Below, in pieces: positions 5,744-35,935 of a stretch of DNA of 64,000 nucleotides (positions are counted from its first letter, which is position 1; every line of letters begins with the position of its first letter). This DNA comes from Macrostomum lignano. Its lineage: Eukaryota. The stretch covers positions 124,001-188,000 of the forward strand of contig NIVC01001426.1 of NCBI GenBank assembly GCA_002269645.1, read 5' to 3'. Below the pieces are notes generated by a model. It did no database searches and was not told the DNA's origin. It was given only the letters and a program-made list of their open reading frames with translations. The position numbers and the translations under genes were made by a program.

Positions 5744-5853
5744 GCGTTAATATTTTTACTGAGTTGAATATCTGCTCAAACTACCTGCTTTCTAACTGGC
5801 TGTCCAGCTTATTCGTATATTTCCATCGCAGTTAAACAAAATCGAATTTAAAT

Positions 5854-8800
5854 ATGCTGTTGGAAAATCAGTCACTGCTAGCCATCCTGCTGCTGCTGCC
5901 CATTCTGGCGCATTCCGTCAGCGCCGAGGCTCTTGACCTCGACGCGGCCAGCTTTCACAAGACTATCGACACCAACGATGGCTCCCTGGTGATGTTCTAC
6001 GCGCCCTGGTGCCCGCACTGCGTCGAGGCCAAGCCGAAGTTCAATAACGCAGCCAAGGAGGTGATGAAAGAGCCTGGCAAAGTTATGGGCATGGTCAACT
6101 GCGATGAAAAGAAGAATCAGGGTAATTTACCGTGTCATGCTTTGGCTAATAAGTTCTTTTCGTTACATATCGGTAGTTACCGTACATTGGACTTCGGGCA
6201 GTGACAAGTGCGTTCTCTCACTCCCACTCTATTCTCTGACACTTCTTCTATTTACCGTCTCTATCTACACACTCTACTCTCTCATGCTTCTACTATCTAC
6301 CTATCTGCCGTCTCTATCTACCCAATCTACTCTCTCACGCTTCTACTATCTACTTATCTGCCGTCTCTATCTACCCAATCTACTCTCTCACGCTTCTACT
6401 ATCTACTTATCTGCCGTCTCTACCTACCCAATCTACTCTCTCACGCTTCTACTATCTACCTATCTGCCGTCTCTATCTACCCAATCTACTCTCTCACGCT
6501 TCTACTATCTACTTATCTGCCGTCTCTATCTACCCAATCTACTCTCTCATGCTTCTACAAGCTAATATCTACCTATCTACTGTCTCTATCTACCAACTCT
6601 AACAATCTCACGATACTACTACACTACCGTCTCTATCTATCCACTCTACGCTCTCACCCTCACTGCCCACCAAAACCTCGCCAGACCTGTGCGCCAAAGA
6701 GAAAATCGAGGGCTATCCGACTATTAAGTTCTACAGCAAAGGCAAGCTCATCCAGGACTTTGAGGATGACAACAGCGAGAAGGCGCTCATCGAATTCATG
6801 AAGAATCCGCCAAAGGAAGGCGAGAAACGGCCGCCGTCGTCTTCGACTGGCAGCGAGAAGGACGACCAGGACTCGGAGCCCGACACCTTGTGAGTTGCTG
6901 CTCTCGTAATTGCTGTTTACGGTGTGTTACCGACATTGTCTTTGGTGTGTTACCGACACTGTCTTCCGTGTGCTACCGACATTGTCTTCGATGTGTTATC
7001 GACATTGTCGTTGGTGTGTTATCGACATTGTCGTTGGTGTGTTATCGACATTGTCTTCCGTGTTCTACCGACATTGTCTTCGATGTGTTATCGACATTGT
7101 CCTCGGTGTGTTACCGACATTGTCGTTGGTGTGTTACCGACACTGTCTTCCGTGTGCTACCGACATTGTCTTCGATGTGTTATCGACACTGTCTTTGCTG
7201 TGTTATCGACATTGTCGTTGGTGTGTTATCGACATTGTCTTCCGTGTTCTACCGACATTGTCTTCGATGTGTTATCGACATTGTCCTCGGTGTGTTACCG
7301 ACATTGTCGTTGGTGTGTTATCGACATTGTCTTCCGTGTTCTACCGACATTGTCTTCGATGTGTTATCGACATTGTCTTCGGTGTGTTACCGACATTGTC
7401 GTTGGTGTGTTATCGACATTGTCTTCCGTGTTCTACCGACATTGTCTTCGATGTGTTATCGACATTGTCTTCGGTGTATTACCGACATTGTCGTTGGTGT
7501 GTTATCGACATTGTCTTCGGTGTGTTACCGACATTGTCGTTGGTGTGTTATCGACATTGTCCTCGGTGTGTTACCGACATTGTCGTTGGTGTGTTATCGA
7601 CATTGTCTTCCGTGTTCTACCGACATTGTCTTCGATGTGTTATCGACATTGTCTTCGGTGTGTTACCGACATTGTCGTTGGTGTGTTATCGACATTGTCT
7701 TCCGTGTTCTACCGACATTGTCTTCGATGTGTTATCGACATTGTCTTCGGTGTGTTACCGACATTGTCGTTGGTGTGTTATCGACATTGTCTTCGGTGTG
7801 TTACCGACATTGTCGTTGGTGTGTTATCGACATTGTCCTCGGTGTGTTACCGACATTGTCGTTGGTGTGTTATCGACATTGTCTTCCGTGTTCTACCGAC
7901 ATTGTCTTCGATGTGTTATCGACATTGTCTTCGGTGTATTACCGACATTGTCGTTGGTGTGTTATCGACATTGTCTTCGGTGTGTTACCGACATTGTCGT
8001 TGGTGTGTTATCGACATTGTCCTCGGTGTGTTACCGACATTGTCGTTGGTGTGTTATCGACATTGTCTTCCGTGTTCTACCGACATTGTCTTCGATGTGT
8101 TATCGACATTGTCTTCGGTGTGTTACCGACATTGTCGTTGGTGTGTTATCGACATTGTCTTCCGTGTTCTACCGACATTGTCTTCGATGTGTTATCGACA
8201 TTGTCCTCGGTGTGTTACCGACATTGTCGTTGGTGTGTTATCGACATTGTCTTCGGTGTGTTACCGACATTGTCGTTGGTGTGTTATCGACATTGTCCTC
8301 GGTGTGTTACCGACATTGTCGTTGGTGTGTTATCGACATTGTCTTCGGTGTGTTACCGACATTGTCGTTGGTGTGTTATCGACATTGTCCTCGGTGTGTT
8401 ACCGACATTGTCGTTGGTGTGTTATCGACATTGTCTTCCGTGTTCTACCGACATTGTCTTCGATGTGTTATCGACATTGTCTTCGGTGTGTTACCGACAT
8501 TGTCGTTGGTGTGTTATCGACATTGTCTTCCGTGTTCTACCGACATTGTCTTCGATGTGTTATCGACATTGTCTTTGCTGTGTTATCGACATTGTCGTTG
8601 GTGTGTTATCGACATTGTCTTCCGTGTTCTACCGACATTGTCTTCGATGTGTTATCGACATTGCCCTCGGTGTGTTACCGACATTGTCGTTGGTGTGTTA
8701 TCGACATTGTCTTCCGTGTTCTACCGACATTGTCTTCGATGTGTTATCGACATTGTCCTCGGTGTGTTACCGACATTGTCGTTGGTGTGTTATCGACATT

Positions 8801-11595
8801 GTCTTCCGTGTTCTACCGACATTGTCTTCGATGTGTTATCGACATTGTCTTCGGTGTATTACCGACATTGTCGTTGGTGTGTTATCGACATTGTCTTCGA
8901 TGTGTTACCGACATTGTCGTTGGTGTGTTATCGACATTGTCTTCGGTGTGTTACCGACATTGTCGTTGGTGTGTTATCGACATTGTCTTCGGTGTATTAC
9001 CGACATTGTCTTCGGTGTATTACCGACATTGTCTTCGATGTGTTATTGACATTGTCTTTAGTGTATTACCGACATTGTCTTTAGTGTATTATCGACATTG
9101 TTTTCGGTGTATTACCGATATTGTCTTCGGTGTATTACCGACATTGTCTTAGGTGGACAGTACGTTGAAATCATTTATTAAAATAATCATAATAAATACT
9201 TGTTTTTACAATGCGCACTACTTTCAGTACTTGATCGGGACCTAGTATAGCTAGTCAGATTATTTAAATTTTTTTAATCCGTTTTAACCATCGCAGCATG
9301 GCCGGCGTGACCTACCTGGGCGCCGGCAACTACTCAGAGATCCTAAATAGCCATGAGTTCGTTCTGGTCTTTTACTATGCTCCCTGGTGCCCGCACTGCA
9401 AGGACAGCAAACCGAAGTTCGAGAAGGCGGCCAAGGATCTGGAAGCCAAACCGGTGGCAGGAAATATCTTGGCGGCGATCAACTGCGACCAGAAGGACAA
9501 CCAGAGTGAGTGGATTGTTGACATTTGGGACAAGTTCTTTGATCTCTGCCGACACTGTGTTTGTTTCTTTGATCTCTGCCGACACTGTGCTTGCTTCTTT
9601 GATCTCTGCCGACACTGTGCTTGCTTCTTTGATCTCTGCCGACACTGATGGTTCTTTGATGTTTACCGACACAGTGCTTGTTTCTTTGATCTCTGCCGAC
9701 ACTGTGCTTGCTTCTTTGATCTCTGCCGACACTGTGCTTGCTTCTTTGATCTCTGCCGACACTGTGCTTGCTTCTTTGATCTCTGCCGACACTGTGCTTG
9801 CTTCTTTGATGTTTACCGACACTGTGCTTTTTTCTTTGATCTCTGCCGACACTGTGCTTGCTTCTTTGATGTTTACCGACACTGTGCTTTTTTCTTTGAT
9901 CTCTGCCGACACTGTGCTTGCTTCTTTGATCTCTGCCGACACTGTGCTTGCTTCTTTGATCTCTGCCGACACTGTGCTTGCTTCTTTGATCTCTGCCGAC
10001 ACTGATGGCTCTTTGATGTTTAGCGACACTGTATTTGCTTCTTTGATGTTTTACCAACCACTGTCTTTAAAGTCGCCACCACTGTTACCATAACATAATA
10101 TTACAGAGCTCTGCGAAGACGAGAAAGTGGAAGGCTACCCCACTATCCGACTGATGAAGAAGCGCGAAATGTGGGCGGAGTTCGAGGACGAAATTGAGGC
10201 CAAACCGCTGTTGGATTTCATCAGCAACCCGCCTAAAGAGAAGGTGCCGCCCACTCCGGTGGAAGAAGAGAAAAAGCCGGGAGAAAGCGGCAAAGAAGAA
10301 TCGGCCGCTGGTGGGCAAGCTGAGAAGCCCGAGGACAAGATGAAGCATGTGACCTACTTGGAGGGCTCTGAGCAGTTCGACGAGTCAATCAAGTCTAACA
10401 AGTACGTCCTGGTGATGTTCTACGCGCCTTGGTGCCCGCACTGCCAGCAGGCCAAGCCCGCGTTCGACAAAGCGGCCGAAGGTCTGGTTGGAGCGCAGGG
10501 CAAAGTGTTGGCGGCCGTCAACTGCGATGTCAAGGCTAATGAGAGTGAGCTTGGGGGGTCATTGCGTGGGTGATTAGAGTAGATGAGTAGACACTCATTA
10601 GAGTAGATGAGTAGACACTCATTAGAGTAGATGAGTAGACACTCATTAGAGTAGATGAGTAGACACTCATTAGAGTAGATGAGTAGACACTCATTAGAGT
10701 AGATGAGTAGGCACTCATTAGAGTAGATGAGTAGACACTCATTAGAGTAGATGAGTAGACACTCATTAGAGTAGATGAGTAGACACTAATTAGAGTAGAT
10801 GAGTAAGCACTCATTAGAGTAGATGAGTAGACACTCAGTAGAGTAGATGAGTAGACACTCATTAGAGTAGATGAGTAGACACTCATTATAGTAGATGAGT
10901 AGACACTCATTAGAGTAGATGAGTAGACACTCAATAGAGTAGATGAGTAGACACTAATTAGAGTAGATGAGTAGACACTCAGTAGAGTAGATGAGTAGAC
11001 ACTCAGTAGAGTAGATGAGTAGACACTCAGTAGAGTAGATGAGTAGACACTTAGTAGAGTAGATGAGTAGACACTCATTAGAGTAGATAAGTAAGCACTC
11101 ATTAGAGTAGATGAGTAGACACTCATTAGAGTAGATGAGTAGACACTAATTAGAGTAGATGAGTAAGCACTCATTAGAGTAGATGAGTAGACACTCATTA
11201 GAGTAGATGAGTAGACACTCATTAGAGTAGATGAGTAGACACTCATTAGAGTAGATGAGTAGACACTAATTAGAGTAGATGAGTAAGCACTCATTAGAGT
11301 AGATGAGTAGACACTCATTAGAGTAGATGAGTAGACACTAATTAGAGTAGATGAGTAAGCACTCATTAGAGTAGATGAGTAGACACTCAGTAGAGCAGGA
11401 TTTTCAACCTTAAAAAACCTCATCTATCCCGCAGAGCTGTGCGAGGACCAGAAAGTCGAAGGCTTCCCAACCTTCATGCTGTTTAGCGACGGCAAGAAGA
11501 GCCAGGACTATGCTGAGGCGCCCATCACGGAGGCTGGCGTCAAGACTTTCATGGAAAAATTGCCCGCCGATGCTGCGGCCAAGGACGAACTTTAA
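5854..11595 (+). CDS. ER protein disulfide isomerase, three catalytic thioredoxin domains (a-a-a; TXNDC5/PDIA5-like), 426 aa; exons 5854-6121, 6685-6889, 9297-9505, 10107-10544, 11435-11595
   Basis: Signal peptide, three (F/Y)YAPWCPHC motifs, GYP/GFP cis-proline loops, C-terminal KDEL-stop; all four GT-AG introns keep frame. Confidence 0.92.
6230..6660. repeat. ~53-bp CT-rich minisatellite in PDI intron 1
   Basis: Tandem units CTACTCTCTCACGCTTCTACTATCTAC... Confidence 0.8.
6915..9150. repeat. 20-bp minisatellite (GTGTTATCGACATTGTCTTC variants) filling PDI intron 2
   Basis: Over 100 tandem units; explains the spurious 700-aa ORFs in three frames. Confidence 0.95.
9535..10040. repeat. 30-bp minisatellite (TTCTTTGATCTCTGCCGACACTGTGCTTGC) in PDI intron 3
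   Basis: Tandem units visible. Confidence 0.95.
10575..11395. repeat. 24-bp minisatellite (ATTAGAGTAGATGAGTAGACACTC) in PDI intron 4
   Basis: Tandem units visible. Confidence 0.95.
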
Positions 11596-12559
11596 TTGCT
11601 CACCAGCCAATCAGAGCGACTCTGGGGTTGAGGTTTCGAACTACCTTGACAGGGGTGGGGTCTATTGAACCAAAAGCTGTGCATTCATTAGAACACTATT
11701 GGCAAAGTTAGATTATATGGATGTCTCTTGGAAATAAATTATTCAAAGGCCGATTTTAAGCATCCAATTTTAACAATATTAACAAAAAGGAAAGTTGCTA
11801 GCATAAAACCGCATCAAGCTCATTATAAAAGTTCAAAGCGATTTAACTTAACTTTCCCCACTACTGACTGATAACCATGTTTAAACCTGTTTATTTCCAA
11901 ATCGCAATAATTCAAAATCATTTTTAGTCTTCCTGTCATTTCCGGGTTTCTCCGCTGCTCTTGCCTCTCTGACTATAAACTGCTAAGCCAGGAGGTACTG
12001 TAGCAATTTTATTGAACCCCTCTTGCCACGTGACTGGCCAGTGAGATCAAGGACGATCGAGTTCGTGTAATTGATAGCCGAAATTAACAAATAATAAATA
12101 TTAAAACTGTTTAAACTGAGTACCTGCAGATGCGACAAAGGACTCTAGTGAATAAAACACGATTGATGTTAGTGTGACTCAATTATTTGTCTTCTTTGTC
12201 ACTTGTAGGAGTATGCAATTACATTAGATCAAATTTAAAAGTTCATTTAGTGTGGCTCAAGAAAATGAATAGCGAACATCGGTCTTTATTTGGGCACCGA
12301 GGCTTGTTTTGAGTCACCCAGCTCGGCCAGGGCCGTTTCATAGCTAGTGTCGCTAGTTTCATCTTGCAAGCGCTCATATTGTTACTGATTTGTAGGTTAG
12401 AGAGAGATGGTAAGCCTTTAGCAGAATCGAGAGGACAAAGTTAATGCTCCAAAGATCTTTGTTCACCTGTCACAGTTTTTGGCCATGGACTGGGGGCAGC
12501 AATTGTCTTGAGCTCTGCCATTCTGGATTAAGTCAAGTGCTCCTAAGCTCAAACTGGCT

Positions 12560-12954
12560 GCAATAGCTATATTAAATTGTCACAGTGTACGACTCTGTGC
12601 ATTGGGTGTAGGCTAACGTGTTGCCGCAGTCGGACTCCCAAACACTACGCAGTTGCTCGTCCAGCCACTGAGGCTTATGTCAAAAGTGATAGACCCATTG
12701 GGCAGATGTGCAGCCGACAGCTCAGCCGCAGCTATTTGCGCGGCGCATCTGAAAGCTGCTGCGTACGGCTGTTCAGTCCAAAGACTGGGGGGTCGCCACA
12801 CACCCTCAATTACCCCAGCTAATGCTGGCACCAAATTTACAGCTGGGTGAACTGAAGCAATGCAGAGTTAAGTGCCGTGCTCAAGGACACAAATGGTTCC
12901 GAGTCTGACCTTATTCAGTATTGAGTCTGACGCTCTAACCATTAGGCTATAACC
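12560..12954 (-). mobile_element. tRNA-derived SINE in the 3' flank of TLR-A (duplicate of 20027-20420)
   Basis: A-box-like TAGCCTAATGG, degenerate B box, then GTGTCCTTGAGCACGGCACTTAACTC...CACCCAGCTGTAAAT typical of metazoan SINE bodies; 3' end approximate. Confidence 0.55.
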
Positions 12955-13045
12955 TTTAGTAGAGATGGTTTGGGATCTTCCAGAAAGTAAAGGTTAGCTC
13001 GCAATTAATTCAAAAATTTTTTTTTCAAAACGATCTCATCCAGCT

Positions 13046-16000
13046 CTAGTCGTCAGACAGAAGCGACTTCGTCCCTGCGGCCTCGGCACCATCAGACTCG
13101 GTCTCGGACTCCTGAGCCCGACGCTCCTGCGACCGTCCCGACACGTCCGCGCCGTCGTACAGCAGCAGTCCCAGCCGGTTCGCGGAGTTGCTGCCGACTC
13201 CGCAGCCGCTGCAGTCTACAATCCGGTCCCGCTTGCACATCCGGTACAGCCGATGCAGCACCTTGCATTCCGGAAATCGCAGCTCGGACTCGCTCAGCTT
13301 CTCCCTCATGACGAGAACGGCCAGAGAGCGGCGGCGCATAAACAGCGACTCGCTGCTCCACTGTGCGCTGTACAGGTTGAGTCTGTTCTCCAGGAAGCCC
13401 CGGCTCAGCACCAGCACGGCGTGTCGGCTCTTGTCGATGGCGGAGGCCGCCTCGTCCAGCATGTTGGACCCGACAGGCGCGTCTCTCTCGGCTTCGTACA
13501 GGCGGAGCCGCAGGTCCGTCTCAAGCTTGAGGACGAGGTCGCCGACCCACTCGGACACCGAGCTGTCCGTCTCGTCGTAGATGAAGCAGGCGCTGCGGAG
13601 GTGGGAGTGGAGTCAGTCAGGTGTGGGATCAGAGCTCAGGGCTGGCTTCATTCAGGAACAATGGCTTAGAAATGTTCAGTAGCAAATTGAGATTTCAAGT
13701 TTACAAAGCCACGAGGGCCAAGCCCCAAGGCACAGAGACTGTGCATGCCTGACCGATTAGAAAGTCAAAGGGCCGCTGTACACCCTGTGTGAGCGTGTGT
13801 GAGTGTTTGCCTGCGTACAGTATTGTGCGATTGTATGTGCTCAGGGAGTCAGTGGAATGGGTAGAATCGCTTCAGCGGTGGTAGTGTGAGGCACAGGGTG
13901 CGCCAACAGCCCGTCGTTCAATTATTGGTATTTATTGAGCTCCACAACTTACTCATATGTCCAGTCGTTCTGCTGCTTCCTGTTCACAATTCCGTTACGA
14001 ATGCCGAAGGCAAGTATTGTGTAGCGCAGCTTCCACCGGTAGCGCAACAGCAGAGCGGTCAGGACAAACACAATCAGCAGGCCACCAATCGATGCGGATA
14101 GAATAAAAATCAGGCGTCGGCTGTAGCAGTCCCACCAGGACAGGCGGAAGTCGATCACTCGCTTGGTAGAGTTCGAGGCTGTGTAGCAGATGGCGTTGAG
14201 CAGCCAATCGCCTTTGCTTTCCAGCTGATATACGGACCACTGCTCTCTGAGCCAATCGGCGAATGGCAGCAGGTTGCACGCGCACCTGAATTGATTGCGA
14301 CCGAGCCTGAGGCGAAGCTTCGGCAGTTTGTCGAATGTTTTTGGATCTATGTTGGCTAGAGGGACCTCCATTAGTTCCAGGTTGCGCAGTGCGGGGGTTG
14401 TTGTGGCAATCAGGTCCACGGGAATGCTTGAGAAGGAATTCCAAGAGACGTCTAGAAGGTTTAAATTTTCAAACTTTCTGTTCAAAATGAATTCAAGTCT
14501 TGCCAGCTGGTTGCCGGAAGCCATTAATGTTTTTAGTGTTGAGAGTTTCGACAGCAGAGCCTTGATAGTTCCATCCGACTGATGGCCAAAGTCGCAGGAG
14601 CTTATGGAGAGACTTTCCAAGCTAGTCAACGGATCAAAGAAGTCACCGCCATGGCACTCTCCGTAATTCAGAAAGTGATCACCAGCTAGGTTAAGTGTTT
14701 TCAGTTTAGAACAGTTTTTAAACCAAGTCTTTCTAAACGGACAGCGTGTGGATCTCAGTTCCACCAGTTTATTCAGGTGCAGCTCGGTAAGATTTGACTG
14801 ATCAACAAATGCATCAGTGAGTGGCTCCGTGTAGCCTGTCTGCGTCAGGCGCAGGGTCTGCAGGCTGGGCAAAATGCCCCGAAACGAAGATGCTTTCAAT
14901 TTCAGTTGTCTATTGTGACTGAGGTCAAGGTAGGTGATTTGACTCAAATTACGGAGCAGGTCCTTAGGCACCCTACTCAATTGATTATTAATTAACCGTA
15001 TGTTTTCTAGTCGAGTCAATTTGTCGAATGCTCGCGGTGGAATGTCCTCGTCCTGCAGGTTGCAGTTCGTAATTGACAGCAGGAACAGCTGAGGACAGTC
15101 GAAGTACTGCTCAGACTGACCAAAGCTCACCGACGAGTGACTTAATGACAATCGACGCAACAGTGGCAGAGCCTTGCACAGTGCGTTGAACTCATCGTAC
15201 GGAAATCCGCGCTTTTTATAGTTAAACTCCAGAGCCAGAGTTCTCACCGCTAGCGGATTCTTGACTTTGGCGATTGCGCGCAGCAGCTGGGGCAGCATGA
15301 TTTCATTTAGTCCAGCGGCAGTTATGGAAATGTCTTTAAGTGTGAAGTTTCGGAATGGCGCGTCTCCGATGCGCGACAGCCGAGTGTTCTGGATGTCCAG
15401 CCTGGTGAAATCGAAGCCACTGAGCTGAGCAGGCGAGTCCAACTCCAACTGGGTGGCGCCATCCGAAATCAGCAGTTCGAGACTGCTCCTGCTAGCCAGA
15501 TTCGTGAATAACAGACTAGAAAATTCCTTATTGGAGTGCGGCAACTTGCCGTGCCAGTGGAACGAGAACGCCGGCGAGCTGGTGTTGAGCACAAATTCTA
15601 ATCGATCGAAGAGCTTTGGCGATCGGATCACGGTGAACTTTTTTAACGCATTCAACTTTAGAAACGATCTCTGTCCGAATCGTGTACCCATTTGTTCTGC
15701 TCCTAGGCTGTCAATTAAAATCTCAGACAGTCCCTTCGGGCAGCAGAATATTTCGGAGAACTCGCCGAGATTCGCAGATAAGTCGTTGTTCCGCAGCGAA
15801 AACGACTTTAGGTTTGGTAAATTCGACAAGACCCGTTTCTCTCTAAACACAAATTTGCACGACGTGCCGATGTACAACTCTTCCAGTCTCCGCCATTGCT
15901 CGTGCCGAAACAGCTCCGATGTGATCTCAACTATCGGCCAAACGGATTCCCTATTGCAGCTGAGTGTTACCATTTTCACTGGACAACTTACAGGATTCAT

Positions 16001-16195
16001 TGAAGCTCCAAGTGCGTCCATGCCAGCCTGACTGAAGCAGTTCTGCATGCCTTTGCACCAGAGTTTTGTGCCGGCATTCCTCAACTCGCAGGAGCATTTC
16101 TCAGGAAAGCTGCAAGGTACCGCGTTGTTGGCGTCCGCTCCCGAAGCCACGAGAAGCAGAAAGCAACTAAAAAGCAGACAAGTTAACCAATTCAT
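13046..16195 (-). CDS. Toll-like receptor A (single cysteine-cluster type), 929 aa; exons 16195-13953, 13592-13046
   Basis: Signal peptide, Cys-rich N-cap, LRRs, LRRCT (NQFRCACNL...W), TM helix; phase-2 intron joins WTY-D-ACFIYD (TIR box 1) and ERDAPVG (box 2). Confidence 0.9.
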
Positions 16196-16935
16196 TCGTC
16201 GCTAAAGTCCAGCCAACAATGTAGCACAGAGTTAGCCTACGGGCAGAAACAGTTTATAAATGCGCGAAGCGATGCTCGATCCGATGAAACAAGTTGTTTA
16301 CGAGTATTACCTCATGTCATGCGTTTTGCGTTAATTTCACCTAAACATATGCGTAGGCAGCGCAACTACTATACTGTTCAAATGCAACCGATTATTGTTT
16401 ATAACTAAGCGTTCATGTTTTCTACCATTTTAAAGTTTCATATCGATTTCTATCAAAGTTGCCATGTTGTTGTGGGCAATTTGGTACAGCACGTGACCGC
16501 GTATGCCAATTTCGAATAAGGCAGGAAGTGCTGCAAGAAGTTTGTAGAAAATCATTAAACAATCGAAACGATTTATAAAAAATCGTCAACTTAGCTGAAA
16601 CCTGACTTTTAAATTGGCCTAGAAGGCTTATTTTTAGTCATCTGTGCCAGCCATATGCAAAGGTAGCTGCGTATAGCTTGTTAAGTAGCGAAGTGCGCAA
16701 TTTATTCTGCTACTGTGGGCCTAAAATTATGCTAGAAATTAGACGCAAATACACATTCTCCCTCGATTAACCTTGAACTAGACGTAAATGTATGCATATA
16801 CATGTCTGCACAGCACCACCGTGTGTCTGCTAATAACGCGAAAGTAATGGCTATAAAAAAGCCAACTTTCTATTCCGACAGCCTTGAAATAAGCGTGAAT
16901 TAAAAAGCCACTAATTTTACTAGGCCAATCGGACA

Positions 16936-19900
16936 ATGTGGCAACTGATTGTGTTGCTTTCAGTTTGCTGCGCCGCTTCGAGCAGAACTTCGCCTGTGCA
17001 GTCTTGCCGCTTCCCAACAAAATGCGACTGCACAATCGAAAGGAAAGATCCCTATCTCATGTGCGTGAAGATGGAGAACTGTCTCAATCAGGCTGACATG
17101 AACGCCATCGCTGCTTCAATCAATCCGAACGTTTGTCCCGTAACCCATTTGAAAATTTCCTGCTCAAAAGAATCCAAAGGCAGGGAAATTGAAATCCAAG
17201 CGGATCTATTCAAGCACTCGAATTGGCAACACCTGAAAGAGCTCACTTTCGGATCTCCGGTTAATTACGTCTTCAAAGAAACAAAGGTTTTAAAACACCT
17301 GAAGAAACTGCGGTACCTGGAGATGCAGTTTATGAACATCGTCACTGACCTTGGTAGACTGTCGGAGACAATGTGCTGCTCCGTCAACTTATCCGAATTG
17401 TACTTTAGAGGTGTCACGATAAAATCACGGGCATCAACTCTTGGTCGGAATTCATTCATTGGCTTTCGGTCTCTTAAAAAGGTGACCATTAATAGCTCTC
17501 CGTCGATGCTGAAGACAATCAAATACCAATTTAATACAACTGCTCCAAGCTTTCAGTTCGAAATTTACGGCAATCTCCCTCATGGAAACTTCTCCAGCAT
17601 CAGCTTGACAAACACTGCTAACCGATCTGGCCTTCATTTGGGCTTGCACGGTGATGATCGTTCATTCCAGCTAGATGCCCCAGCTCAAATCGAAGGGTTC
17701 ACATTGTCCTCATTTTCCATGACTAACTACCATCTGGTGTCTGTCGGTGAGTCACCGTTTGCCGACTTCCAGCTGCAGACGATCGAGATTTCTTCTTCGC
17801 GATTGAATGAGAAGCTGTTGAAGAGGCTGCTGCGAGCTGCAAGCCGAGTCAAGGACCCCGCGCTCTTCAATAAACTCTCCGTCCAGTTCTCCCTGAGCAA
17901 GCCGGGATTCCCGTATGACGACTTCAATCGTCTGTGCGAGTCCTTGCCTTGGATAAGGGAAATATCCATCAGCCACTCACCAATTAGCTTGTCATACCCA
18001 AACAAGCTGCTCAACTGCTCCCAGCTGAGAACACTGTCATTAACCAACACAAAGTTAAATCTGCTGCCACCAAATGTTTTCAGTGGTCTACCCAAACTGA
18101 AAACTTTAGTCCTTACCAACTGCCATCTGTACGAGTTTCCCAAAGAAGCTCTTCGACAAACGCCCAATCTAGAGACGCTAATCATGGAGAAGAACAACAA
18201 CATGGACGTCAAGGCTACCTCACTTCGAGGCATTCTCCCCAACTTGCGCTCTCTGGATTTGTCCTACGCAAGCATATCTGCTGCACTTGTTGATGCTTTC
18301 ATGGATCAGAAGAATCTGACCTACTTAAAGCTAAGCAACCTGCATAACAACGCATGGTGCACTGTCGACAAGACTTGGTTCCGTGGATGCGACAAGCTGA
18401 CGAACCTGGACCTCTCGCAAAACGACATGCTGTCGAAGGCGCTGTGCCATGCAAACGGGTTCCTCGCACCGCTCAGACATCTTCAACACCTCAACTTGAG
18501 AAAGTGTTTAGTCGGCAGACAAACCGATGGAATCATAAAGTCAATGCTGACGAATCTCACCTCACTGAGAACTCTTGACTTGGAAGGAAACGACATCGAT
18601 AAAGTGAAACACATTCTGAGTGTCCGGATGCCCAATCTAACCACCTTGAACCTCGCGAAGAACTCCTTCTCCGAATTTTCGTCAGACCTTTTCATTACGA
18701 GGACACCGAATCTCAAAGTGCTTAAACTTGCCGCCAACCCAATCGTGAGTCTGAGGCCTGCAGCTTTCAATCGAATGCCGGATCTCAGGGTGCTCTTCGG
18801 AGGTAACCAGTTCGTCTGCTCATGCGACTTGGTGAAGTTTACTGACTGGATGAGACAGCAGTACCCGATCTACCAGATTGAGAACAAAGGTTCGTGGCTA
18901 TCCAATGCAATGTGCAACAAGATGCCTAACGGGTCCCATCCAATCAGCAATGTCATGCTGTTGGACTTCCGACTGTCCTGGTGGGACTGCTACAGCAGAC
19001 GGCTGATTGCTGTGTTGTCCTCGGCGATCGGCGGACTGATGGTTGTGTTCGCGGTGAGCAGCGCGGTTTCGAGATACCGCTGGAAGCTCCGGTATGCGCT
19101 GCTAGCGTTCTGCATTCGGCACGGACTCGTGAGAGGGCGGAAGCTGCAGAGCGAATGGACCTACGAGTGAGTTTCGATATTGTGCAAGTAGCTTTCAATG
19201 GAAAAACATTCCCCTTTAGAATGGACTTTATTGGATTTAGGCTAATGTTGAGCTGGTAGATGGTCTGTTCCAAAAACTTTGGTACAACTGAATTGGTAAG
19301 CTCTACGAACTTGGATGATAAAACATGGTAGGTGCGAAGTAAAGCTTTTAGGCTCCTGGACGGTATGGAACCAATGCTTAATTGGCCAGTAATTTGATTG
19401 ATACTTTGATGACCGCCGCAGCGCCTGCTTCATCTACGACGAGACGGACAGCTCGGTGTCCGAATGGGTCGGCGACCTTGTCCTCAAGCTCGAGACGGAC
19501 CTGCGGCTCCGCCTGTACGAAGCCGAGAGAGACGCGCCCGTCGGGTCCAACATGCTGGACGAGGCGGCCTCGGCCATCGACAAGAGCCGACAAGCCGTGC
19601 TGGTGCTGAGCCGGGGCTTCCTGGAGAACAGGCTCAACTTGTACAGCGCACAGTGGAGCAGCGAGTCGCTGTTCATGCGCCGCCGCTCTCTGGCCGTTCT
19701 CGTCATGAGGGAGAAGCTGAGCGAGTCCGAGCTGCGATTTCCGGAATGCAAGGTGCTGCATCGGCTGTACCGGATGTGCAAGCGGGACCGGATTGTAGAC
19801 TGCAGCGGCTGCGGAGTCGGCAGCAACTCCGCGAACCGGCTGGGACTGCTGCTGTACGACGGCGCGGCGTGTCGGGACGGTCGCAGGAGCGTGGTGCCGA

Positions 19901-19971
19901 GGCCGCAGGGACGAAGTCGCTTCTGTCTGACGACTAGAGCTGGATGGATCGTTTTGAAAAAAAATTTTTGA
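16936..19971 (+). CDS. Toll-like receptor B; exons 16936-19166, 19422-19971 (would end at 19937 if a 1-bp deletion near 19868 is an error)
   Basis: Same architecture and intron position as TLR-A; LRRCT NQFVCSCDL; TIR exon nearly identical to A. Confidence 0.9.
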
Positions 19972-20026
19972 ATTAATTGCGAGCTAACCTTTACTTTCTG
20001 GAAGATCCCAAACCATCTCTACTAAA

Positions 20027-20420
20027 GGTTATAGCCTAATGGTTAGAGCGTCAGACTCAATACTGAATAAGGTCAGACTCGGAACAATTTGTGTCCTTGA
20101 GCACGGCACTTAACTCTGCATTGCTTCAGTTCACCCAGCTGTAAATTTGGTGCCAGCATTAGCTGGGGTAATTGAGGGTGTGTGGCGACCCCCCAGTCTT
20201 TGGACTGAACAGCCGTACGCAGCAGCTTTCAGATGCGCCGCGCAAATAGCTGCGGCTGAGCTGTCGGCTGCACATCTGCCCAATGGGTCTATCACTTTTG
20301 ACATAAGCCTCAGTGGCTGGACGAGCAACTGCGTAGTGTTTGGGAGTCCGACTGCGGCAACACGTTAGCCTACACCCAATGCACAGAGTCGTACACTGTG
20401 ACAATTTAATATAGCTATTG
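20027..20420 (+). mobile_element. tRNA-derived SINE in the 3' flank of TLR-B
   Basis: GGTTATAGCCTAATGGTTAGAGCGTCAGACTC tRNA-like head plus SINE-like body; 3' end approximate. Confidence 0.55.
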
Positions 20421-21539
20421 CAGCCAGTTTGAGCTTAGGAGCACTTGACTTAATCCAGAATGGCAGAGCTCAAGACAATTGCTGCCCCCAGTCTATTCCC
20501 CCGTAAAAGTTGACATCTCAGCAATTGAACCAATTGTTACGAGCTAGTACAATGTCATTACAGTAGTACAAAAAGGTTTAATTTTTAAACTGACTACTTT
20601 AAATTGTTGCGACTTTGTAGCTAGCTAATACGCTCGTACGTACTTCATTTGGTTATTAAACTAATAAAAAATGGCTATTACTTTGCTACGAGTAAAGTAA
20701 ATTGTACAAATACCGAAAATTGTACAATTTTTTTAAAACTAGCTATTTTGCGTTACACTACAAGCGTATTTCATCTATTATCGCTGAAATTTCAAAGTTT
20801 TTTACTGCTGACATCGTTTTTGAATGCTTTGACTCGTATGTACATTTTAATAATTATAAAAAGTTGTCTCTTAAAAGAAATTTATCTTTAGGTCAAATCA
20901 TTTCAGTAGCTATCTAATGTAAAATTTAATTTTATCTATTTTTGTAATTAGCTTCTTTGCACAGGTTTATAACTAAAGCTGTTACAAAAATTTGGCCAGT
21001 TAAAATGGTAGGATATATCCACACACATTCCAATTACATGCATGTGTAAAAATTAAAGCAGATAATTATTTATTGATTTTAAAATAATCTCGTAGAATAA
21101 AGGTTATGAAATTAACAAACGTATTGATAGGATTGTCTAATTAGTTAACGATACTAAAAAAAACTATTAAATCAAATTTAATCAGCACCTGAATGCAAAA
21201 ATTGAAACAATATATATTTGAAAAATTTTTAATTTCCCAGAACAATGTTAGATACTTAGCCGATTTTTCGTAAAAAATATTTCTGCCACCAGTTTTGCAA
21301 TTTTCGAATGGGTCAAAACCAATTTTAGAATTAGTTTAGACTCAGTTTAGATTCAAAGTTATTACTAGAAAAGAATTCGTCCGAGGAAAAAAGAAGACAA
21401 CGCGTTTTGCCCTTAAAACAAGATTCTCATGAGTAGTAGCCATATAGTCATGCGACTTCCGTCGAAGAATTGAGCCGTAAGACCTTGCAGGACGTCTATC
21501 TCAACCATCCTGACGCAAAACCGATTTCAATCACCCGAG

Positions 21540-23912
21540 CTAGAGAAGCCACTCGGTCTCGGACTCCTGAGCCCGACGCTCCTGCGACCGTCCCGACACG
21601 GCCGCGCCGTCGTACAGCAGCAGTCCCAGCCGGTTCGCGGAGTTGCTGCTGACTCCGCAGCCGCTGCAGTCTACAATCCGGTCCCGCTTGCACATCCGGT
21701 ACAGCCGATGCAGCACCTTGCATTCCGGAAATCGCAGCTCGGACTCGCTCAGCTTCTCCCTCATGACGAGAACGGCCAGAGAGCGGCGGCGCATGAACAG
21801 CGACTCGCTGCTCCACTGTGCGCTGTACAGGTTGAGTCTGTTCTCCAGGAAGCCCCGGCTCAGCACCAGCACGGCTTGTCGGCTCTTGTCGATGGCCGAG
21901 GCCGCCTCGTCCAACATGTTGGACCCGACGGGCGCGTCTCTCTCGGCTTCGTACAGGCGGAGCCGCAGGTCCGTCTCGAGCTTGAGGACGAGGTCGCCGA
22001 CCCACTCGGACACCGAGCTGTCCGTCTCGTCGTAGATGAAGCAGGCGCTGCGGCGGTCATCAAAGTATCAATCAAATTACTCGCCAATTAAGCATTGGTT
22101 CCATACCGTTCCATAACGTACCAAAGTTTTTGGAACAGACTATCTACCAGCTCAACATTAGCCTAAATCCAATAAATCCGACATTAGCACAATATTTAAA
22201 CTCACTCGTAGGTCCATTCGCTCTGCAGCTTCCGCCCTCTCACGAGTCCGTGCCGAATGCAGAACGCTAGCAGCGCATACCGGAGCTTCCAGCGGTATCT
22301 CGAAACCGCGCTGCTCACCGCGAACACAACCATCAGTCCGCCGATCGCCGAGGACAACACAGCAATCAGCCGTCTGCTGTAGCAGTCCCACCAGGACAGT
22401 CGGAAGTCCAACAGCATGACATTGCTGATTGGATGGGACCCGTTAGGCATCTTGTTGCACATTGCATTGGATAGCCACGAACCTTTGTTCTCAATCTGGT
22501 AGATCGGGTACTGCTGTCTCATCCAGTCAGTAAACTTCACCAAGTCGCATGAGCAGACGAACTGGTTACCTCCGAAGAGCACCCTGAGATCCGGCATTCG
22601 ATTGAAAGCTGCAGGCCTCAGACTCACGATTGGGTTGGCGGCAAGTTTAAGCACTTTGAGATTCGGTGTCCTCGTAATGAAAAGGTCTGACGAAAATTCG
22701 GAGAAGGAGTTCTTCGCGAGGTTCAAGGTGGTTAGATTGGGCATCCGGACACTCAGAATGTGTTTCACTTTATCGATGTCGTTTCCTTCCAAGTCAAGAG
22801 TTCTCAGTGAGGTGAGATTCGTCAGCATTGACTTTATGATTCCATCGGTTTGTCTGCCGACTAAACACTTTCTCAAGTTGAGGTGTTGAAGATGTCTGAG
22901 CGGTGCGAGGAACCCGTTTGCATGGCACAGCGCCTTCGACAGCATGTCGTTTTGCGAGAGGTCCAGGTTCGTCAGCTTGTCGCATCCACGGAACCAAGTC
23001 TTGTCGACAGTGCACCATGCGTTGTTATGCAGGTTGCTTAGCTTTAAGTAGGTCAGAAATCTCGATCGTCTGCAGCTGGAAGTCGGCAAACGGTGACTCA
23101 CCGACAGACACCAGATGGTAGTTAGTCATGGAAAATGTGGACAATGTGAACCCTTCGATTTGAGCTGGGGCATCTAGCTGGAATGAACGATCATCACCGT
23201 GCAAGCCCAAATGAAGGCCAGATCGGTTAGCAGTGTTTGTCAAGCTGATGCTGGAGAAGTTTCCATGAGGGAGATTGCCGTAAATTTCGAACTGAAAGCT
23301 TGGAGCAGTTGTATTAAACTGGTATTTGATTGTCTTCACCATCGACGGAGAGCTATTAATGGTCACCTTTTTAAGAGACCGAAAGCCAATGAATGAATTC
23401 CGACCAAGAGTTGATGCCCGTGATTTTATCGTGACACCTCTAAAGTGCAATTCCGATAAGTTGACGGAGCAGCACATTGTCTCCGACAGTCTACCAAGGT
23501 CAGTGACGATGTTCATAAACTGCATCTCCAGGTACCGCAGTTTCTTCAGGTGTTTTAAAACCTTTGTTTCTTTGAAGACGTAATTAACCGGAGATCCGAA
23601 AGTGAGCTCTTTCAGGTGTTGCCAATTCGAGTGCTTGAATAGATCCGCTTGGATTTCAATTTCCCTGCCTTTGGATTCTTTTGAGCAGGAAATTTTCAAA
23701 TGGGTTACGGGACAAACGTTCGGATTGATTGAAGCAGCGATGGCGTTCATGTCAGCCTGATTGAGACAGTTCTCCATCTTCACGCACATGAGATAGGGAT
23801 CTTTCCTTTCGATTGTGCAGTCGCATTTTGTTGGGAAGCGGCAAGACTGCACAGGCGAAGTTCTGCTCGAAACGGCGCAGCAAACTGAAAGCAACAAAAT
23901 CAGTTGCCGCAT
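21540..23912 (-). pseudogene. Toll-like receptor C: inverted copy of TLR-B with a 524-bp frameshifting deletion; segments 23912-22206, 22047-21540
   Basis: Near-identical to B except that B 17794-18317 is missing (junction GAGATTTCT/GACCTAC, TCT microhomology); first ORF stops after 295 aa. Confidence 0.85.
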
Positions 23913-24444
23913 TGTCCGATTGTCTTATTAAGTCAGGGTTGCTTAAAAAATCGGTAAGTTTTACAAACTAATGCTCTACCAAGCAGAAACAGAGACAACT
24001 GCTTGCATCTTGCTAACTGTAACTTTGGGGCACCTGGCAGGTTCCAGGTGCGCGAAAGCCTATTTATGCGTCAGATGTAAATCAGCGGAAGTTCGCTGCT
24101 TCTATATCTAAACACTCTCATGCGATGCATTGAAGAGAGGTGTAGCTTCACCTTTTTTGTCACGCTGAAGTTTCTAGCCAAGATAAAAGCTTAATTCATT
24201 GTGCCCCCAAGTTGCTATGTTAAGATACGAGCCCTATGTTTATATTCACTGCATAGATCGCCTGGATCTCTGTACTTTATCAAATCTGACTTTCATTTGG
24301 TTTTCATTATATTTTTCGTAATCATCAATTAATATATGTAATTTACAGTATCTTTTCATAATTTATCAGAAACTTAAGTTAGAGGGACAGTAAGTGTAAT
24401 AGCGAATAGCTAGGTGATACATTTAAAACTTATTTAGAACAGCA

Positions 24445-25178
24445 ATTAGCTGGCGAACCCTCTGTAGCTGGCGCCCCCTTTGTAGCTGGCGCCCCCTTTG
24501 TAGCTGGCGCCCCCTCTGTAGCTGGCGCCCCCTCTGTAGCTGGCGCCCCCTCTGTAGCTGGCGCCCCCCTGTAGCTGGCGCCCCCTCTGTAGCTGGCGCC
24601 CCCTCTGTAGCTGGCGCCCCCTCTGTAGCTGGCGCCCCCTCTGTAGCTGGCGCCCCCCTGTAGCTGGCGCCCCCTCTGTAGCTGGCGCCCCCTCTGTAGC
24701 TGGCGCCCCCTCTGTAGCTGGCGCCCCCTCTGTAGCTGGCGCCCCCCTGTAGCTGGCGCCCCCTCTGTAGCTGGCGCCCCCCTGTAGCTGGCGACCCCTC
24801 TGTAGCTGGCGCCCCCTCTGTAGCTGGCGCCCACACTGTAGCTGGCGCCCCCTCTGTAGCTGGCGCCCCCTCTGTAGCTGGCGCCCCCTCTGTAGCTGGC
24901 GCCCACTTTGTAGCTGGCGCCCACACTGTAGCTGGCGCCCCCTCTGTAGCTGGCGCCCCCTCTGTAGCTGGCGCCCACTTTGTAGCTGGCGCCCACACTG
25001 TAGCTGGCGCCCCCTCTGTAGCTGGCGCCCCCTCTGTAGCTGGCGCCCACTTTGTAGCTGGCGCCCACTCTGTAGCTGGCGCCCCCTCTGTAGCTGGCGC
25101 CCACTTTGTAGCTGGCGCCCACACTGTAGCTGGCGCCCCCTCTGTAGCTGGCGCCCCCTCTGTAGCTGGCGCCCCCTA
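24445..25178. repeat. 17-18-bp minisatellite (CTGTAGCTGGCGCCCCCT)
   Basis: Tandem units visible. Confidence 0.95.
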
Positions 25179-25284
25179 GAAGTTACAGCTTAATGCAGGC
25201 GCGAAAATATTCCTCAGGAAAAATACGCTCGTAAGTGAGCCATCCAATCAAAAGTCTTCTGTGTTGAATGTCAGAGACGAATAT

Positions 25285-35935
<10,651 letters not shown>

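What the first reader, a model, noticed from the sequence alone, without database searches (positions are those of the whole stretch)
12488..20493. Divergent TLR ectodomains share one near-identical TIR module
TLR-A and TLR-B ectodomain exons are clearly diverged in protein, yet 12488-13596 is an almost exact inverted copy of 19418-20493: the TIR exon plus ~550 bp of non-coding 3' flank. The TIR exon is also visibly GC-richer than the ectodomain exons. This implies a modular receptor system in which sensors diversify while the signalling exon is homogenised by conversion or shuffled in.
Basis: partly seen in the sequence, partly recalled or inferred. Interest (0 to 1): 0.8.

Follow-up and report, generated by a model that had tools for sequence, protein, structure and literature searches.

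The report
Flatworm Toll-like receptor genes sharing one TIR exon
Two old, very different Toll-like receptor genes of the flatworm Macrostomum lignano (plus a broken third copy) carry nearly the same last exon and 3' flank, most likely through recent gene conversion, as is known for vertebrate TLR1/TLR6; the less expected point is that these genes exist in a phylum published surveys say has no Toll-like receptors.

Summary
Window 12485-13602 is an inverted copy of 19412-20496: 1118 aligned columns, 12 mismatches, 4 indels. The tract covers the TIR-coding last exon plus 525-561 bp of non-coding 3' flank, and starts 6-10 nt upstream of the splice acceptor.

The ectodomain exons are anciently diverged. 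They are about 40% identical in protein, and conserved residues share a codon 39% of the time against 37% expected by chance. The TIR stretch has dS 0.077 and 94% identical codons. TIR-exon GC3 is 0.82-0.85 against 0.60.

It is an inverted, 99-100% identical copy of TLR-B with a frame-breaking 521-bp deletion and its own near-identical TIR exon.

Best explanation: recent, probably repeated, non-allelic gene conversion between nearby inverted paralogues. This is known for mammalian TLR1/TLR6 and avian TLR1A/B and TLR2A/B, so a "modular receptor system" is an over-reading of two genes and a pseudogene.

The window is Macrostomum lignano. Published surveys report no TLRs in this species or in Platyhelminthes. 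These genes have a signal peptide, LRRs, LRRCT, one transmembrane segment and a divergent TIR that falls below Pfam's cut-off.

The parts
13953..16195 (-). TLR-A exon 1: signal peptide, LRRNT-like Cys cluster, LRRs, LRRCT, transmembrane segment, juxtamembrane. 747 codons plus 2 nt; donor GA|GTAAGT.
   Evidence: ORF and donor site; Pfam LRR_8 72 bits; hydrophobic segment at residues 693-719 and Cys pattern.
13593..13952 (-). TLR-A intron, 360 nt. It cannot be aligned with the TLR-B intron except for the last 6-10 nt (CCGCAG).
   Evidence: Three-way alignment.
13046..13592 (-). TLR-A exon 2 coding part: TIR domain plus acidic C-tail, stop TAG at 13048-13046. Left arm of the homogenised tract.
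   Evidence: phmmer against PDB hits the TLR2 TIR at E 5.6e-6. The 10 hits scanned in a 1.84-billion-protein library all have strong Pfam TIR domains. The splice junction WTYD|ACFIYDE matches UniProt models P0001 and P0122.
12485..13045 (-). TLR-A 3' flank shared with TLR-B. 561 nt, non-coding, GC 0.48.
   Evidence: 99.6% identical to 19972-20496 and found nowhere else in the window. No Rfam or tRNA match.
16196..16935 (.). 740-bp unique spacer between the two divergently oriented start codons; candidate shared promoter region, GC 0.39.
   Evidence: The promoter function is inferred only.
16936..19166 (+). TLR-B exon 1 (ectodomain, transmembrane segment); donor GA|GTGAGT.
   Evidence: Pfam LRR_8 102 bits; 99.6% identical to residues 438-1173 of UniProt model P0122.
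19167..19421 (+). TLR-B intron, 255 nt. Shared with TLR-C apart from deletions.
19422..19971 (+). TLR-B exon 2 (TIR plus tail). Right arm of the homogenised tract. It carries a 1-nt deletion near 19868 that shifts the tail frame, and a 30-nt in-frame deletion relative to A.
   Evidence: The UniProt model P0122 reads this tail in frame (GADVSGRSQER-GAEAAGTKSLL), so the 1-nt deletion is probably an assembly error or a polymorphism.
19972..20496 (+). TLR-B 3' flank shared with TLR-A, 525 nt.
21540..22047 (-). TLR-C exon 2: third near-identical TIR exon. Identity to A and B ends at about 21544-21551, inside the C-tail. Its 3' flank is unrelated to theirs.
22206..23912 (-). TLR-C exon 1 remnant: inverted copy of TLR-B exon 1 lacking B 17794-18314 (521 bp, frame broken, TCT microhomology at the junction near 23055-23057). 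Probable pseudogene. The copied segment runs to 23931, only 19 bp upstream of the ATG.

Best explanation
The window, from Macrostomum lignano, holds a small cluster of Toll-like-receptor-type genes. TLR-A (minus strand) and TLR-B (plus strand) lie head to head, and TLR-C is a truncated inverted duplicate of TLR-B lying tail to tail with it. A and B are ancient paralogues. Their last exon (TIR domain plus C-tail) and about 0.55 kb of 3' flank form 1.1-kb inverted repeats 5.8 kb apart. These repeats have been made nearly identical by recent non-allelic gene conversion, in which a break in one arm is repaired from the other arm. This probably happened more than once.

The 5' limit of the tract sits where homology ends, at the unalignable introns. 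The 3' limit is the end of the shared flank. New mutations in the TIR exon are filtered by purifying selection, so at least two copies are functional.

Shown: the identity pattern, the dS contrast, the synonymous bias, the uneven divergence along the tract and the third copy.

Inferred: the repair mechanism itself, GC-biased conversion as the cause of the high GC3, and receptor function (ligand binding by the LRR ectodomain, signalling by TIR-TIR contacts).
For: (1) Ectodomain A against B, 738 codons: pS 0.755 (saturated), pN 0.41. TIR, 148 codons: 8 synonymous and 1 non-synonymous difference, dS 0.077, dN 0.003.
(2) Identical codons at conserved residues: 39% in the ectodomain (chance 37%) against 94% in the TIR, Fisher p 1e-30. 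This is the criterion used for vertebrate TLR conversion (PMC3125219).
(3) The non-coding flank is 99.6% identical over 525 nt, so selection on the protein cannot explain the identity.
(4) Divergence along the tract is uneven. There are 9 substitutions in the first 253 nt of the exon and 2 in the remaining ~855 nt (p 5e-5). This suggests at least two events of different age.
(5) 8 of 9 TIR substitutions are synonymous (p 1e-4), which indicates purifying selection since the exchange.
(6) At the 9 sites where A and B differ, TLR-C agrees with A at 4 and with B at 5, although its ectodomain is 99-100% B-like.
(7) Two sites 35 bp apart (A 13340 and A 13375) show all four allele combinations across the window's A, B and C and the C-position copy in UniProt model P0122. 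Neither site is a CpG.
(8) B and C also show patchy identity in exon 1: 11/877 against 0 coding mismatches, p 9e-4.
(9) The same A(-) B(+) C(-) order is read through by the independently annotated UniProt model A0A1I8HEG2 (P0122), which differs slightly in sequence.
(10) GC3 is 0.82-0.85 in the TIR exon against 0.58-0.70 in other exons. Among singleton changes, 8 of 11 are GC to AT, as expected for a sequence held above its mutational GC equilibrium.
Against: There is only one locus and no outgroup species. The classic signature, paralogues closer than orthologues, could not be tested.

The flank is as AT-rich as the background (GC 0.48). Long-term GC-biased conversion over the whole tract is therefore unlikely, and the flank may have joined the tract only recently.

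Conversion between TIR exons as diverged as the ectodomains would lack the homology needed to start. So either homogenisation has been continuous since the duplication or a one-off replacement came first.

The fine-scale variants, including the four-gamete pattern and the 1-nt deletion, could be consensus or polishing errors among near-identical repeats.

The 5' end of the tract coincides with the splice acceptor to within 6-10 nt. Plain conversion does not predict this.
Confidence: 0.7

Rival explanations
1. A single recent replacement or duplication of the terminal exon. One segment (TIR exon plus 3' flank) was copied once from one gene onto the other, for example by replication template switching with microhomology at the acceptor (CCGCAG). 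There has been no recurrent conversion since.
For: The flank is unrelated to anything else and has background GC, as expected for a recent copy. The 5' junction has only 6-10 nt of shared sequence next to unalignable introns. TLR-C shows that segmental inverted duplication does happen at this locus, with a microhomology deletion junction.
Against: Divergence differs about 15-fold between the 5' part of the exon and the rest of the tract. TLR-C's TIR is equidistant from A and B, unlike its ectodomain. All four allele combinations occur at two close sites. No displaced older TIR exon lies downstream of A or B. One weak hit at 38181-38339 (E 0.12) is probably chance.
Confidence: 0.2
2. An assembly or polishing artefact. 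One TIR-plus-flank copy, or the whole TLR-C unit, was created or homogenised by the assembler in a repeat-rich, partly polyploid genome.
For: The window is about one third minisatellite arrays. TLR-B carries a 1-nt deletion that a second annotation of the locus lacks. Variants at the C-position TIR differ between the two versions.
Against: The copies are not identical: 11 substitutions inside the tract and several indels, of which the 9 in the exon are 8:1 synonymous to non-synonymous. Random errors would not give that ratio. The arms are only 1.1 kb long and 5.8 kb apart, which single long reads span easily. The UniProt model P0122 crosses all three TIR copies in the same order and orientation. 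TLR-C differs from B by a 521-bp deletion with microhomology.
Confidence: 0.05
3. RNA-mediated transfer. A cDNA of the last exon (from the acceptor to the poly(A) site) served as the repair template, which would explain why the tract starts at the exon edge.
For: The tract begins within 6-10 nt of the splice acceptor and continues through what could be the 3' UTR.
Against: Identity extends 6-10 nt into the intron. There is no canonical AATAAA/ATTAAA signal within about 90 nt of the 3' end of the tract and no A-tract at its end; only a variant AATATA about 90 nt upstream. The transcript end is unknown.
Confidence: 0.03
4. Strong purifying selection or codon constraint alone keeps the TIR exons alike.
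For: The TIR is usually the most conserved part of a TLR. dN/dS in the tract is about 0.04.
Against: Synonymous sites are 93% identical and the 525-nt non-coding flank is 99.6% identical, while ectodomain synonymous sites are at chance level.
Confidence: 0.01

Closest known systems
Gene conversion between mammalian TLR1 and TLR6 (Kruithof et al. 2007, PMC2077338) and between avian TLR1A/TLR1B and TLR2A/TLR2B (Huang et al. 2011, PMC3125219)
   Same: Neighbouring TLR paralogues keep divergent N-terminal ectodomains while the C-terminal part, including the TIR, is homogenised at the DNA level. Identical-codon use is 96-99% in the converted part against 57-66% elsewhere; here it is 94% against 39%. 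In cattle the tract runs about 200 bp into the 3' UTR; here it runs 525-561 bp past the stop codon.
   Different: Vertebrate tracts start inside the single coding exon (LRR16-19) and include the LRRCT and transmembrane segment. Here the tract starts at an intron/exon edge and excludes the transmembrane segment. TLR1 and TLR6 are described as lying in tandem (PMC2077338); these are inverted (head to head and tail to tail). The ectodomains here are far more diverged (about 40% identity). Recurrence across species is shown for vertebrates and untested here.
Arm-to-arm conversion in palindromes and inverted repeats (primate Y-chromosome palindromes, plastid inverted repeats). This comparison rests on general knowledge and was not tested with the tools.
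   Same: Near-identical inverted arms flank a unique spacer. Intrachromosomal conversion would keep the arms alike, and a crossover would invert the spacer.
   Different: The arms are only 1.1 kb. No evidence for the alternative spacer orientation is available. Here an inversion would swap two ectodomain exons between two equivalent terminal exons.
Single-cysteine-cluster (V-type) Toll-like receptors of other animals
   Same: Signal peptide, LRRNT-like cysteines, LRRs, one LRRCT next to a single transmembrane segment, and a C-terminal TIR with box 1 (YDACFIYD) and box 2 (ERDAPVG). The best TIR relatives are TLRs of insects, fish, oysters, echinoderms and amphioxus, at 24-39% identity.
   Different: The TIR is divergent. 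It scores below Pfam's gathering cut-offs and has no recognisable box 3 (FW). An intron separates the TIR exon. The host phylum is reported to lack TLRs (PMC8609888, PMC10279657, PMC7958881).

Membership tests
Toll-like receptor (LRR - transmembrane - TIR type I receptor; criteria as in PMC8609888) | At least one extracellular leucine-rich-repeat domain | tested here: met
   Pfam LRR_8 72 bits (A) and 102 bits (B) against a cut-off of 27; LRR_4 48 and 73 bits.
Toll-like receptor (LRR - transmembrane - TIR type I receptor; criteria as in PMC8609888) | Single transmembrane segment between the LRRs and the TIR, with an N-terminal signal peptide | tested here: met
   One strongly hydrophobic stretch at residues 693-719 (A) and 689-711 (B), just after the LRRCT cysteines. 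A also has a hydrophobic N-terminus above the cut-off; B's N-terminus (MWQLIVLLSVCCAASS) looks like a signal peptide by eye but did not reach the cut-off. This is a simple Kyte-Doolittle scan, not a dedicated predictor.
Toll-like receptor (LRR - transmembrane - TIR type I receptor; criteria as in PMC8609888) | Cytoplasmic TIR domain | tested here: met
   Pfam TIR 17 bits and TIR_2 17-19 bits fall below the cut-offs of 21.3 and 28. phmmer against PDB gives human TLR2 TIR at E 5.6e-6 over 113 residues, then TLR7, TLR6, TIRAP, TLR10 and TLR1. In a 1.84-billion-protein library the best non-self hit has E 7e-12, and all 10 hits scanned carry Pfam TIR at 57-172 bits. The AlphaFold model (pLDDT 56, about 70 over the first 90 residues) matches TIR structures first: TLR1 at E 5e-4, TLR2 with TM 0.60. 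The alignment behind the model was made of TIR domains, so that test is biased.
Toll-like receptor (LRR - transmembrane - TIR type I receptor; criteria as in PMC8609888) | Expression as one spliced LRR-TM-TIR protein, and signalling through TIR adaptors | not testable with these tools
   The junction WTYD|ACFIYDE appears in UniProt gene models P0001 and P0122. No transcript or functional data could be reached.
Interlocus gene conversion of TLR paralogues (TLR1/TLR6 type) | A sharply bounded segment where paralogues are far more alike than in the rest of the gene, including synonymous and non-coding sites | tested here: met
   dS 0.077 against saturated; identical codons 94% against 39%; flank 99.6% identical.
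Interlocus gene conversion of TLR paralogues (TLR1/TLR6 type) | Within the segment, paralogues of one species are closer than orthologues of different species | not testable with these tools
   No other Macrostomum sequence was retrievable.
Interlocus gene conversion of TLR paralogues (TLR1/TLR6 type) | Evidence of more than one exchange (mosaic tracts, four-gamete violations) | tested here: inconclusive
   Divergence is uneven along the tract (p 5e-5). All four allele combinations occur at two sites 35 bp apart. The latter rests on a second annotation read through an antisense frame, and polishing artefacts are possible.
Palindrome with flip-flop inversion | Near-identical inverted arms around a unique spacer | tested here: met
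   Arms 12485-13602 and 19412-20496; spacer 5809 nt.
Palindrome with flip-flop inversion | Both spacer orientations present among chromosomes | not testable with these tools
   This needs long reads or population data. UniProt fragment P0001 joins a B-type ectodomain to a TIR with the A-type His variant. That fits an inversion but equally fits conversion or another copy.
Modular or cassette receptor system (many sensors drawing on one signalling exon) | Many distinct sensor genes or cassettes attached to the same module | tested here: not met
   The window holds only three units, one of them broken. No other annotated protein with this TIR module was found in the protein collections. The M. 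lignano annotation is poor, so this is a weak negative.

The most novel reading that the evidence does not exclude
The TLR-A/TLR-B pair is a small functional palindrome. The 1.1-kb TIR-plus-flank arms recombine repeatedly, so the 5.8-kb spacer carrying both ectodomain exons and their shared promoter region flips between two orientations. Each orientation yields two intact genes. The conversion that accompanies this keeps one signalling exon common to all copies, including a pseudogene that acts as a sequence reservoir. On this reading these would also be the first bona fide TLRs of Platyhelminthes, which would move the inferred loss of TLRs to after the split of Macrostomorpha.
Probability: 0.15. 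Interest if true: 0.65.

Novelty: new member of a known kind. Interest (0 to 1): 0.5.

Why it matters
Homogenisation of the TIR-coding end of neighbouring TLR paralogues is established in mammals and birds. Finding it in a flatworm, at an intron-bounded exon and between inverted genes, extends a known pattern but does not change it.

The larger consequence is taxonomic. Three publications state that Platyhelminthes lack TLRs, and one of them names M. lignano (PMC8609888, PMC10279657, PMC7958881). They infer an early loss in the phylum. This window carries two intact LRR-transmembrane-TIR genes under purifying selection in the TIR.

Two things probably hid them. The TIR scores below Pfam's cut-off. 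The public gene model (A0A1I8HEG2) is also a chimera that runs antisense through two of the three units.

If the genes are expressed, the loss of TLRs would date to after the Macrostomorpha split. M. lignano is used as a laboratory model of regeneration (Wasik et al. 2015, cited in PMC8609888), and is, from general knowledge not checked here, amenable to RNAi and transgenesis, so TLR function in a flatworm could then be tested directly.

Tried and rejected
No independent DNA of the locus could be fetched.
- The full-length TLR-B search was swamped by generic LRR hits (TLR7, TLR13, chaoptin at about 25% identity) and did not even return the M. lignano cluster. Two narrower searches returned only P0001.
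- The single-sequence AlphaFold model was useless, with pLDDT 42.
- The shared flank looked by eye like a tRNA-derived SINE. ARAGORN and Rfam found nothing, and the flank is not repeated elsewhere in the window. That idea was dropped, though a genome-wide repeat check was not possible.
- There is no canonical AATAAA/ATTAAA poly(A) signal in the flank; the only variant hexamers are ACTAAA and AATATA, the latter about 90 nt from the tract end. Whether the tract equals the transcribed last exon remains open.
- A lenient search for a displaced, older TIR exon gave only one weak hit, at 38181-38339 on the minus strand (31% over 62 residues, E 0.12). It was judged to be chance.
- The apparent A/B mosaic in TLR-C's TIR was reconsidered. 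With three sequences every variable site is a singleton, so the window alone does not prove a mosaic. The four-gamete pattern appears only when P0122 is added.

Full report
**Observation**

A repeat scan of 10-24 kb shows that 12485-13029 and 13147-13602 are 98-99% complementary to 19952-20496 and 19412-19867. BLASTN joins these into one alignment of 1118 columns with 12 mismatches and 4 gap openings.

16917-17793, 18315-19185 and 19360-19868 are 99-100% complementary to 23055-23931, 22187-23057 and 21601-22109. So there is a third unit, TLR-C, which is an inverted copy of TLR-B.

**Gene models**

TLR-A lies on the minus strand.
- Exon 1 is 16195-13953, with donor GA|GTAAGT.
- The intron is 360 nt.
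- Exon 2 is 13592-13046, with acceptor CCGCAG|C and stop codon TAG.
- The product is 929 aa.

TLR-B lies on the plus strand.
- Exon 1 is 16936-19166, with donor GA|GTGAGT.
- The intron is 255 nt.
- Exon 2 is 19422-19971.
- The product is 926 aa.

The two start codons face away from each other across a 740-bp unique spacer. UniProt models for the same species contain the junction ...WTYD|ACFIYDE....

TLR-C (minus strand, 23912-21540) lacks B's 17794-18314. This 521-bp deletion has a TCT microhomology at its junction and breaks the reading frame. TLR-C shares only 19 bp upstream of B's ATG. Its similarity to A and B stops at 21544-21551, inside the C-tail. It is most likely a pseudogene.

**What the proteins are**

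Both intact proteins have the following features:
- a hydrophobic N-terminus (above the scan's cut-off in A only; B's was judged by eye);
- an N-terminal cysteine cluster;
- strong LRR matches (LRR_8 at 72 and 102 bits);
- an LRRCT-like cysteine cluster;
- one transmembrane segment (A residues 693-719).

The exon-2 product matches Pfam TIR and TIR_2 only below threshold: 17-19 bits against cut-offs of 21.3 and 28. Other tests show it is a real TIR.
- phmmer against PDB sequences finds the human TLR2 TIR at E 5.6e-6 over 113 residues, with boxes 1 and 2 aligned. TLR7, TLR6, TIRAP, TLR10 and TLR1 follow.
- An exhaustive HMMER search of 1.84 billion representative proteins gives 24 hits at E up to 1e-3. 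The best non-self hit has E 7e-12 and 34% identity.
- All ten hits scanned carry Pfam TIR at 57-172 bits. Of the 19 hits looked up by name, 7 are named TLRs (fish, oyster, brittle star, crinoid, amphioxus, acorn worm); most of the rest are unnamed or called only TIR domain-containing proteins, including the best hit, from a stick insect.
- An AlphaFold model built on a 16-sequence alignment has low confidence (pLDDT 56, about 70 over the first 90 residues). Its best PDB matches are all TIR domains. The alignment consisted of TIR domains, so this test is biased and only supportive.

**Organism and published context**

The only close database relatives are UniProt entries of Macrostomum lignano.
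- A0A1I8HD87 (P0001) is a 190-aa fragment.
- A0A1I8HEG2 (P0122) is a 1670-aa model.

tblastn maps P0122 onto the plus strand of the window. It runs antisense through TIR-A and ectodomain A, sense through TLR-B (99.6% identity over 736 aa), and antisense through TIR-C and ectodomain C. It is therefore a chimeric mis-annotation. It also shows that a second, slightly different version of the locus has the same A(-) B(+) C(-) layout.

The neighbouring genes are ordinary metazoan genes: thioredoxin/PDI-like, MYCBPAP, Rpb11-like, CS-domain and WD40.

Published surveys state that TLRs are absent from M. lignano and from all Platyhelminthes examined (PMC8609888; PMC10279657; PMC7958881). The first of these started from a TIR HMM search of predicted proteins. 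A sub-threshold TIR and a chimeric gene model would explain a miss.

**Is the shared module more than selection?**

Nei-Gojobori counts for A against B:
- Ectodomain, 738 codons: pS 0.755 (saturated), pN 0.41.
- TIR, 148 codons: 8 synonymous and 1 non-synonymous difference, dS 0.077, dN 0.003.

Identical codons at conserved residues:
- Ectodomain: 39%, against a chance expectation of 37%.
- Last 73 codons of exon 1: 52%, not significantly different from the rest of the ectodomain.
- TIR: 94% (p 1e-30 against the ectodomain).

The 525-nt non-coding flank is 99.6% identical and occurs nowhere else in the window. Selection alone is therefore excluded. The DNA was copied recently.

**Fine structure of the tract**

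Identity begins 6-10 nt upstream of the acceptor. Further upstream the introns cannot be aligned.

Inside the tract there are 11 substitutions (the twelfth mismatch lies in the intron at 13599).
- 9 fall in the first 253 nt of the exon.
- 2 fall in the remaining ~855 nt (p 5e-5).
- 8 of the 9 in the exon are synonymous (p 1e-4).

This argues for purifying selection on the TIR and for at least two exchanges of different age.

At the 9 sites TLR-C agrees with A at 4 and with B at 5. With three sequences this amounts to a star-like relationship, and it contrasts with C's B-like ectodomain.

Adding the C-position copy read from P0122 gives all four allele combinations at two non-CpG sites 35 bp apart. 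This indicates exchange among copies, or possibly polishing chimeras.

B and C are also patchy in exon 1: 11 mismatches in 877 nt against none in the coding part of the next 871-nt arm (p 9e-4). Homogenisation is therefore not special to the TIR. It acts wherever homology exists.

B's tail carries a 30-nt in-frame deletion and a 1-nt deletion near 19868. P0122 reads the tail in frame, so the 1-nt deletion is probably an error or a polymorphism.

**GC content**

TIR-exon GC3 is 0.82-0.85. The ectodomains have 0.60-0.61 and other exons in the window 0.58-0.70 (z about 7). Of 11 singleton changes among the three TIR copies, 8 are GC to AT. This fits a sequence held above its mutational equilibrium, for example by GC-biased conversion. 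The flank has background GC (0.48), so any such bias has not acted on the flank for long.

**Explanation and rivals**

- The best-supported reading is recent, probably repeated, non-allelic gene conversion between inverted paralogues 5.8 kb apart (confidence 0.7).
- A one-off replacement of the terminal exon is the main rival (0.2). It handles the AT-rich flank and the sharp 5' junction well. It handles the uneven divergence and the four-gamete pattern poorly.
- An assembly artefact is unlikely (0.05). The copies differ in a selection-shaped way, single long reads can span both arms, and a second annotation reproduces the layout.
- An RNA-templated transfer (0.03) and selection alone (0.01) are poorly supported.

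**Comparison with what is known**

The pattern matches the gene conversion described for mammalian TLR1/TLR6 (PMC2077338) and avian TLR1A/B and TLR2A/B (PMC3125219). It matches down to the identical-codon criterion and to extension into the 3' UTR in cattle.

The differences here are an intron-bounded tract that excludes the transmembrane segment, inverted rather than tandem gene order, much older ectodomain divergence, and a pseudogene as a third participant.

**Verdict**

The evolutionary phenomenon is a new instance of a known kind. The existence of LRR-transmembrane-TIR genes in a flatworm said to lack TLRs is the more noteworthy result and deserves transcript-level confirmation.

Noticed in passing
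window 13046-16195 (-) and 16936-19971 (+): Two intact LRR-transmembrane-TIR genes in Macrostomum lignano. Published surveys report no TLRs in this species or in Platyhelminthes (PMC8609888, PMC10279657, PMC7958881). The TIR scores below Pfam's gathering cut-offs, which probably explains the miss.
   Followed up: partly
window 11476-26091 (+), UniProt A0A1I8HEG2 (P0122): The public 1670-aa 'TIR domain-containing protein' model is a chimera. It strings together antisense reading frames of TLR-A and TLR-C with the sense frame of TLR-B, so TLR-A is not annotated as a protein at all.
   Followed up: yes
window 21544-23931 (-): TLR-C is an inverted, 99-100% identical partial copy of TLR-B with a 521-bp frame-breaking deletion (TCT microhomology) and only 19 bp of upstream sequence. 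Its 5' ORF (295 aa, signal peptide plus N-terminal LRRs) could in principle encode a soluble LRR protein. Of 8 coding differences from B in this part, 6 change the amino acid.
   Followed up: partly
window ~19868 (+): A 1-nt deletion in TLR-B shifts the C-terminal tail frame. The UniProt version of the locus reads through in frame, so this is probably an assembly indel or a polymorphism.
   Followed up: partly
window 13592/19422 (exon 2 starts): The homogenised tract starts within 6-10 nt of the splice acceptor, although the 255-360-nt introns offered plenty of room for a boundary elsewhere. This may be chance (roughly 3-8%) or a limit set by loss of homology. It is unexplained.
   Followed up: partly
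window 13984-14157 vs 18959-19132: The last ~70 codons of exon 1 (LRRCT end, transmembrane segment, juxtamembrane) are more alike between A and B than the rest of the ectodomain: 61% aa, 67% nt, pS 0.55. This could be an older conversion tract or plain constraint. The identical-codon excess (52% against 39%) is not significant.
   Followed up: partly
window 38181-38339 (-): A weak TIR-box-like tblastn match (31% over 62 aa, E 0.12) in a short ORF-less stretch between satellite arrays. Probably chance, possibly a decayed TIR relic.
   Followed up: partly
whole window, e.g. 6920-9155, 10573-11395, 24447-25177, 30931-32618, 36337-37783, 40084-42689, 46182-48040, 48639-50602, 58108-59752: Roughly a third of the window is long, well-conserved minisatellite arrays (periods 18-273 nt, up to 83 copies), plus a (GTA)n run of 182 copies at 26422-26966 and a (TAGA)n run at 59793-60326. 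Several arrays have extreme strand skew, for example GC skew 0.6-0.8 at 46-48 kb.
   Followed up: no
window 3984-4193 vs 38926-39460: The same 21-nt satellite family occurs in inverted orientation at two places 35 kb apart, at 87-90% complementarity.
   Followed up: no
window 5836-10570 (+): A thioredoxin/PDI-like gene with at least three WCPHC-type exons. Its introns are filled with the 92-nt, 30-nt and 24-nt minisatellites, which produce long spurious ORFs.
   Followed up: no
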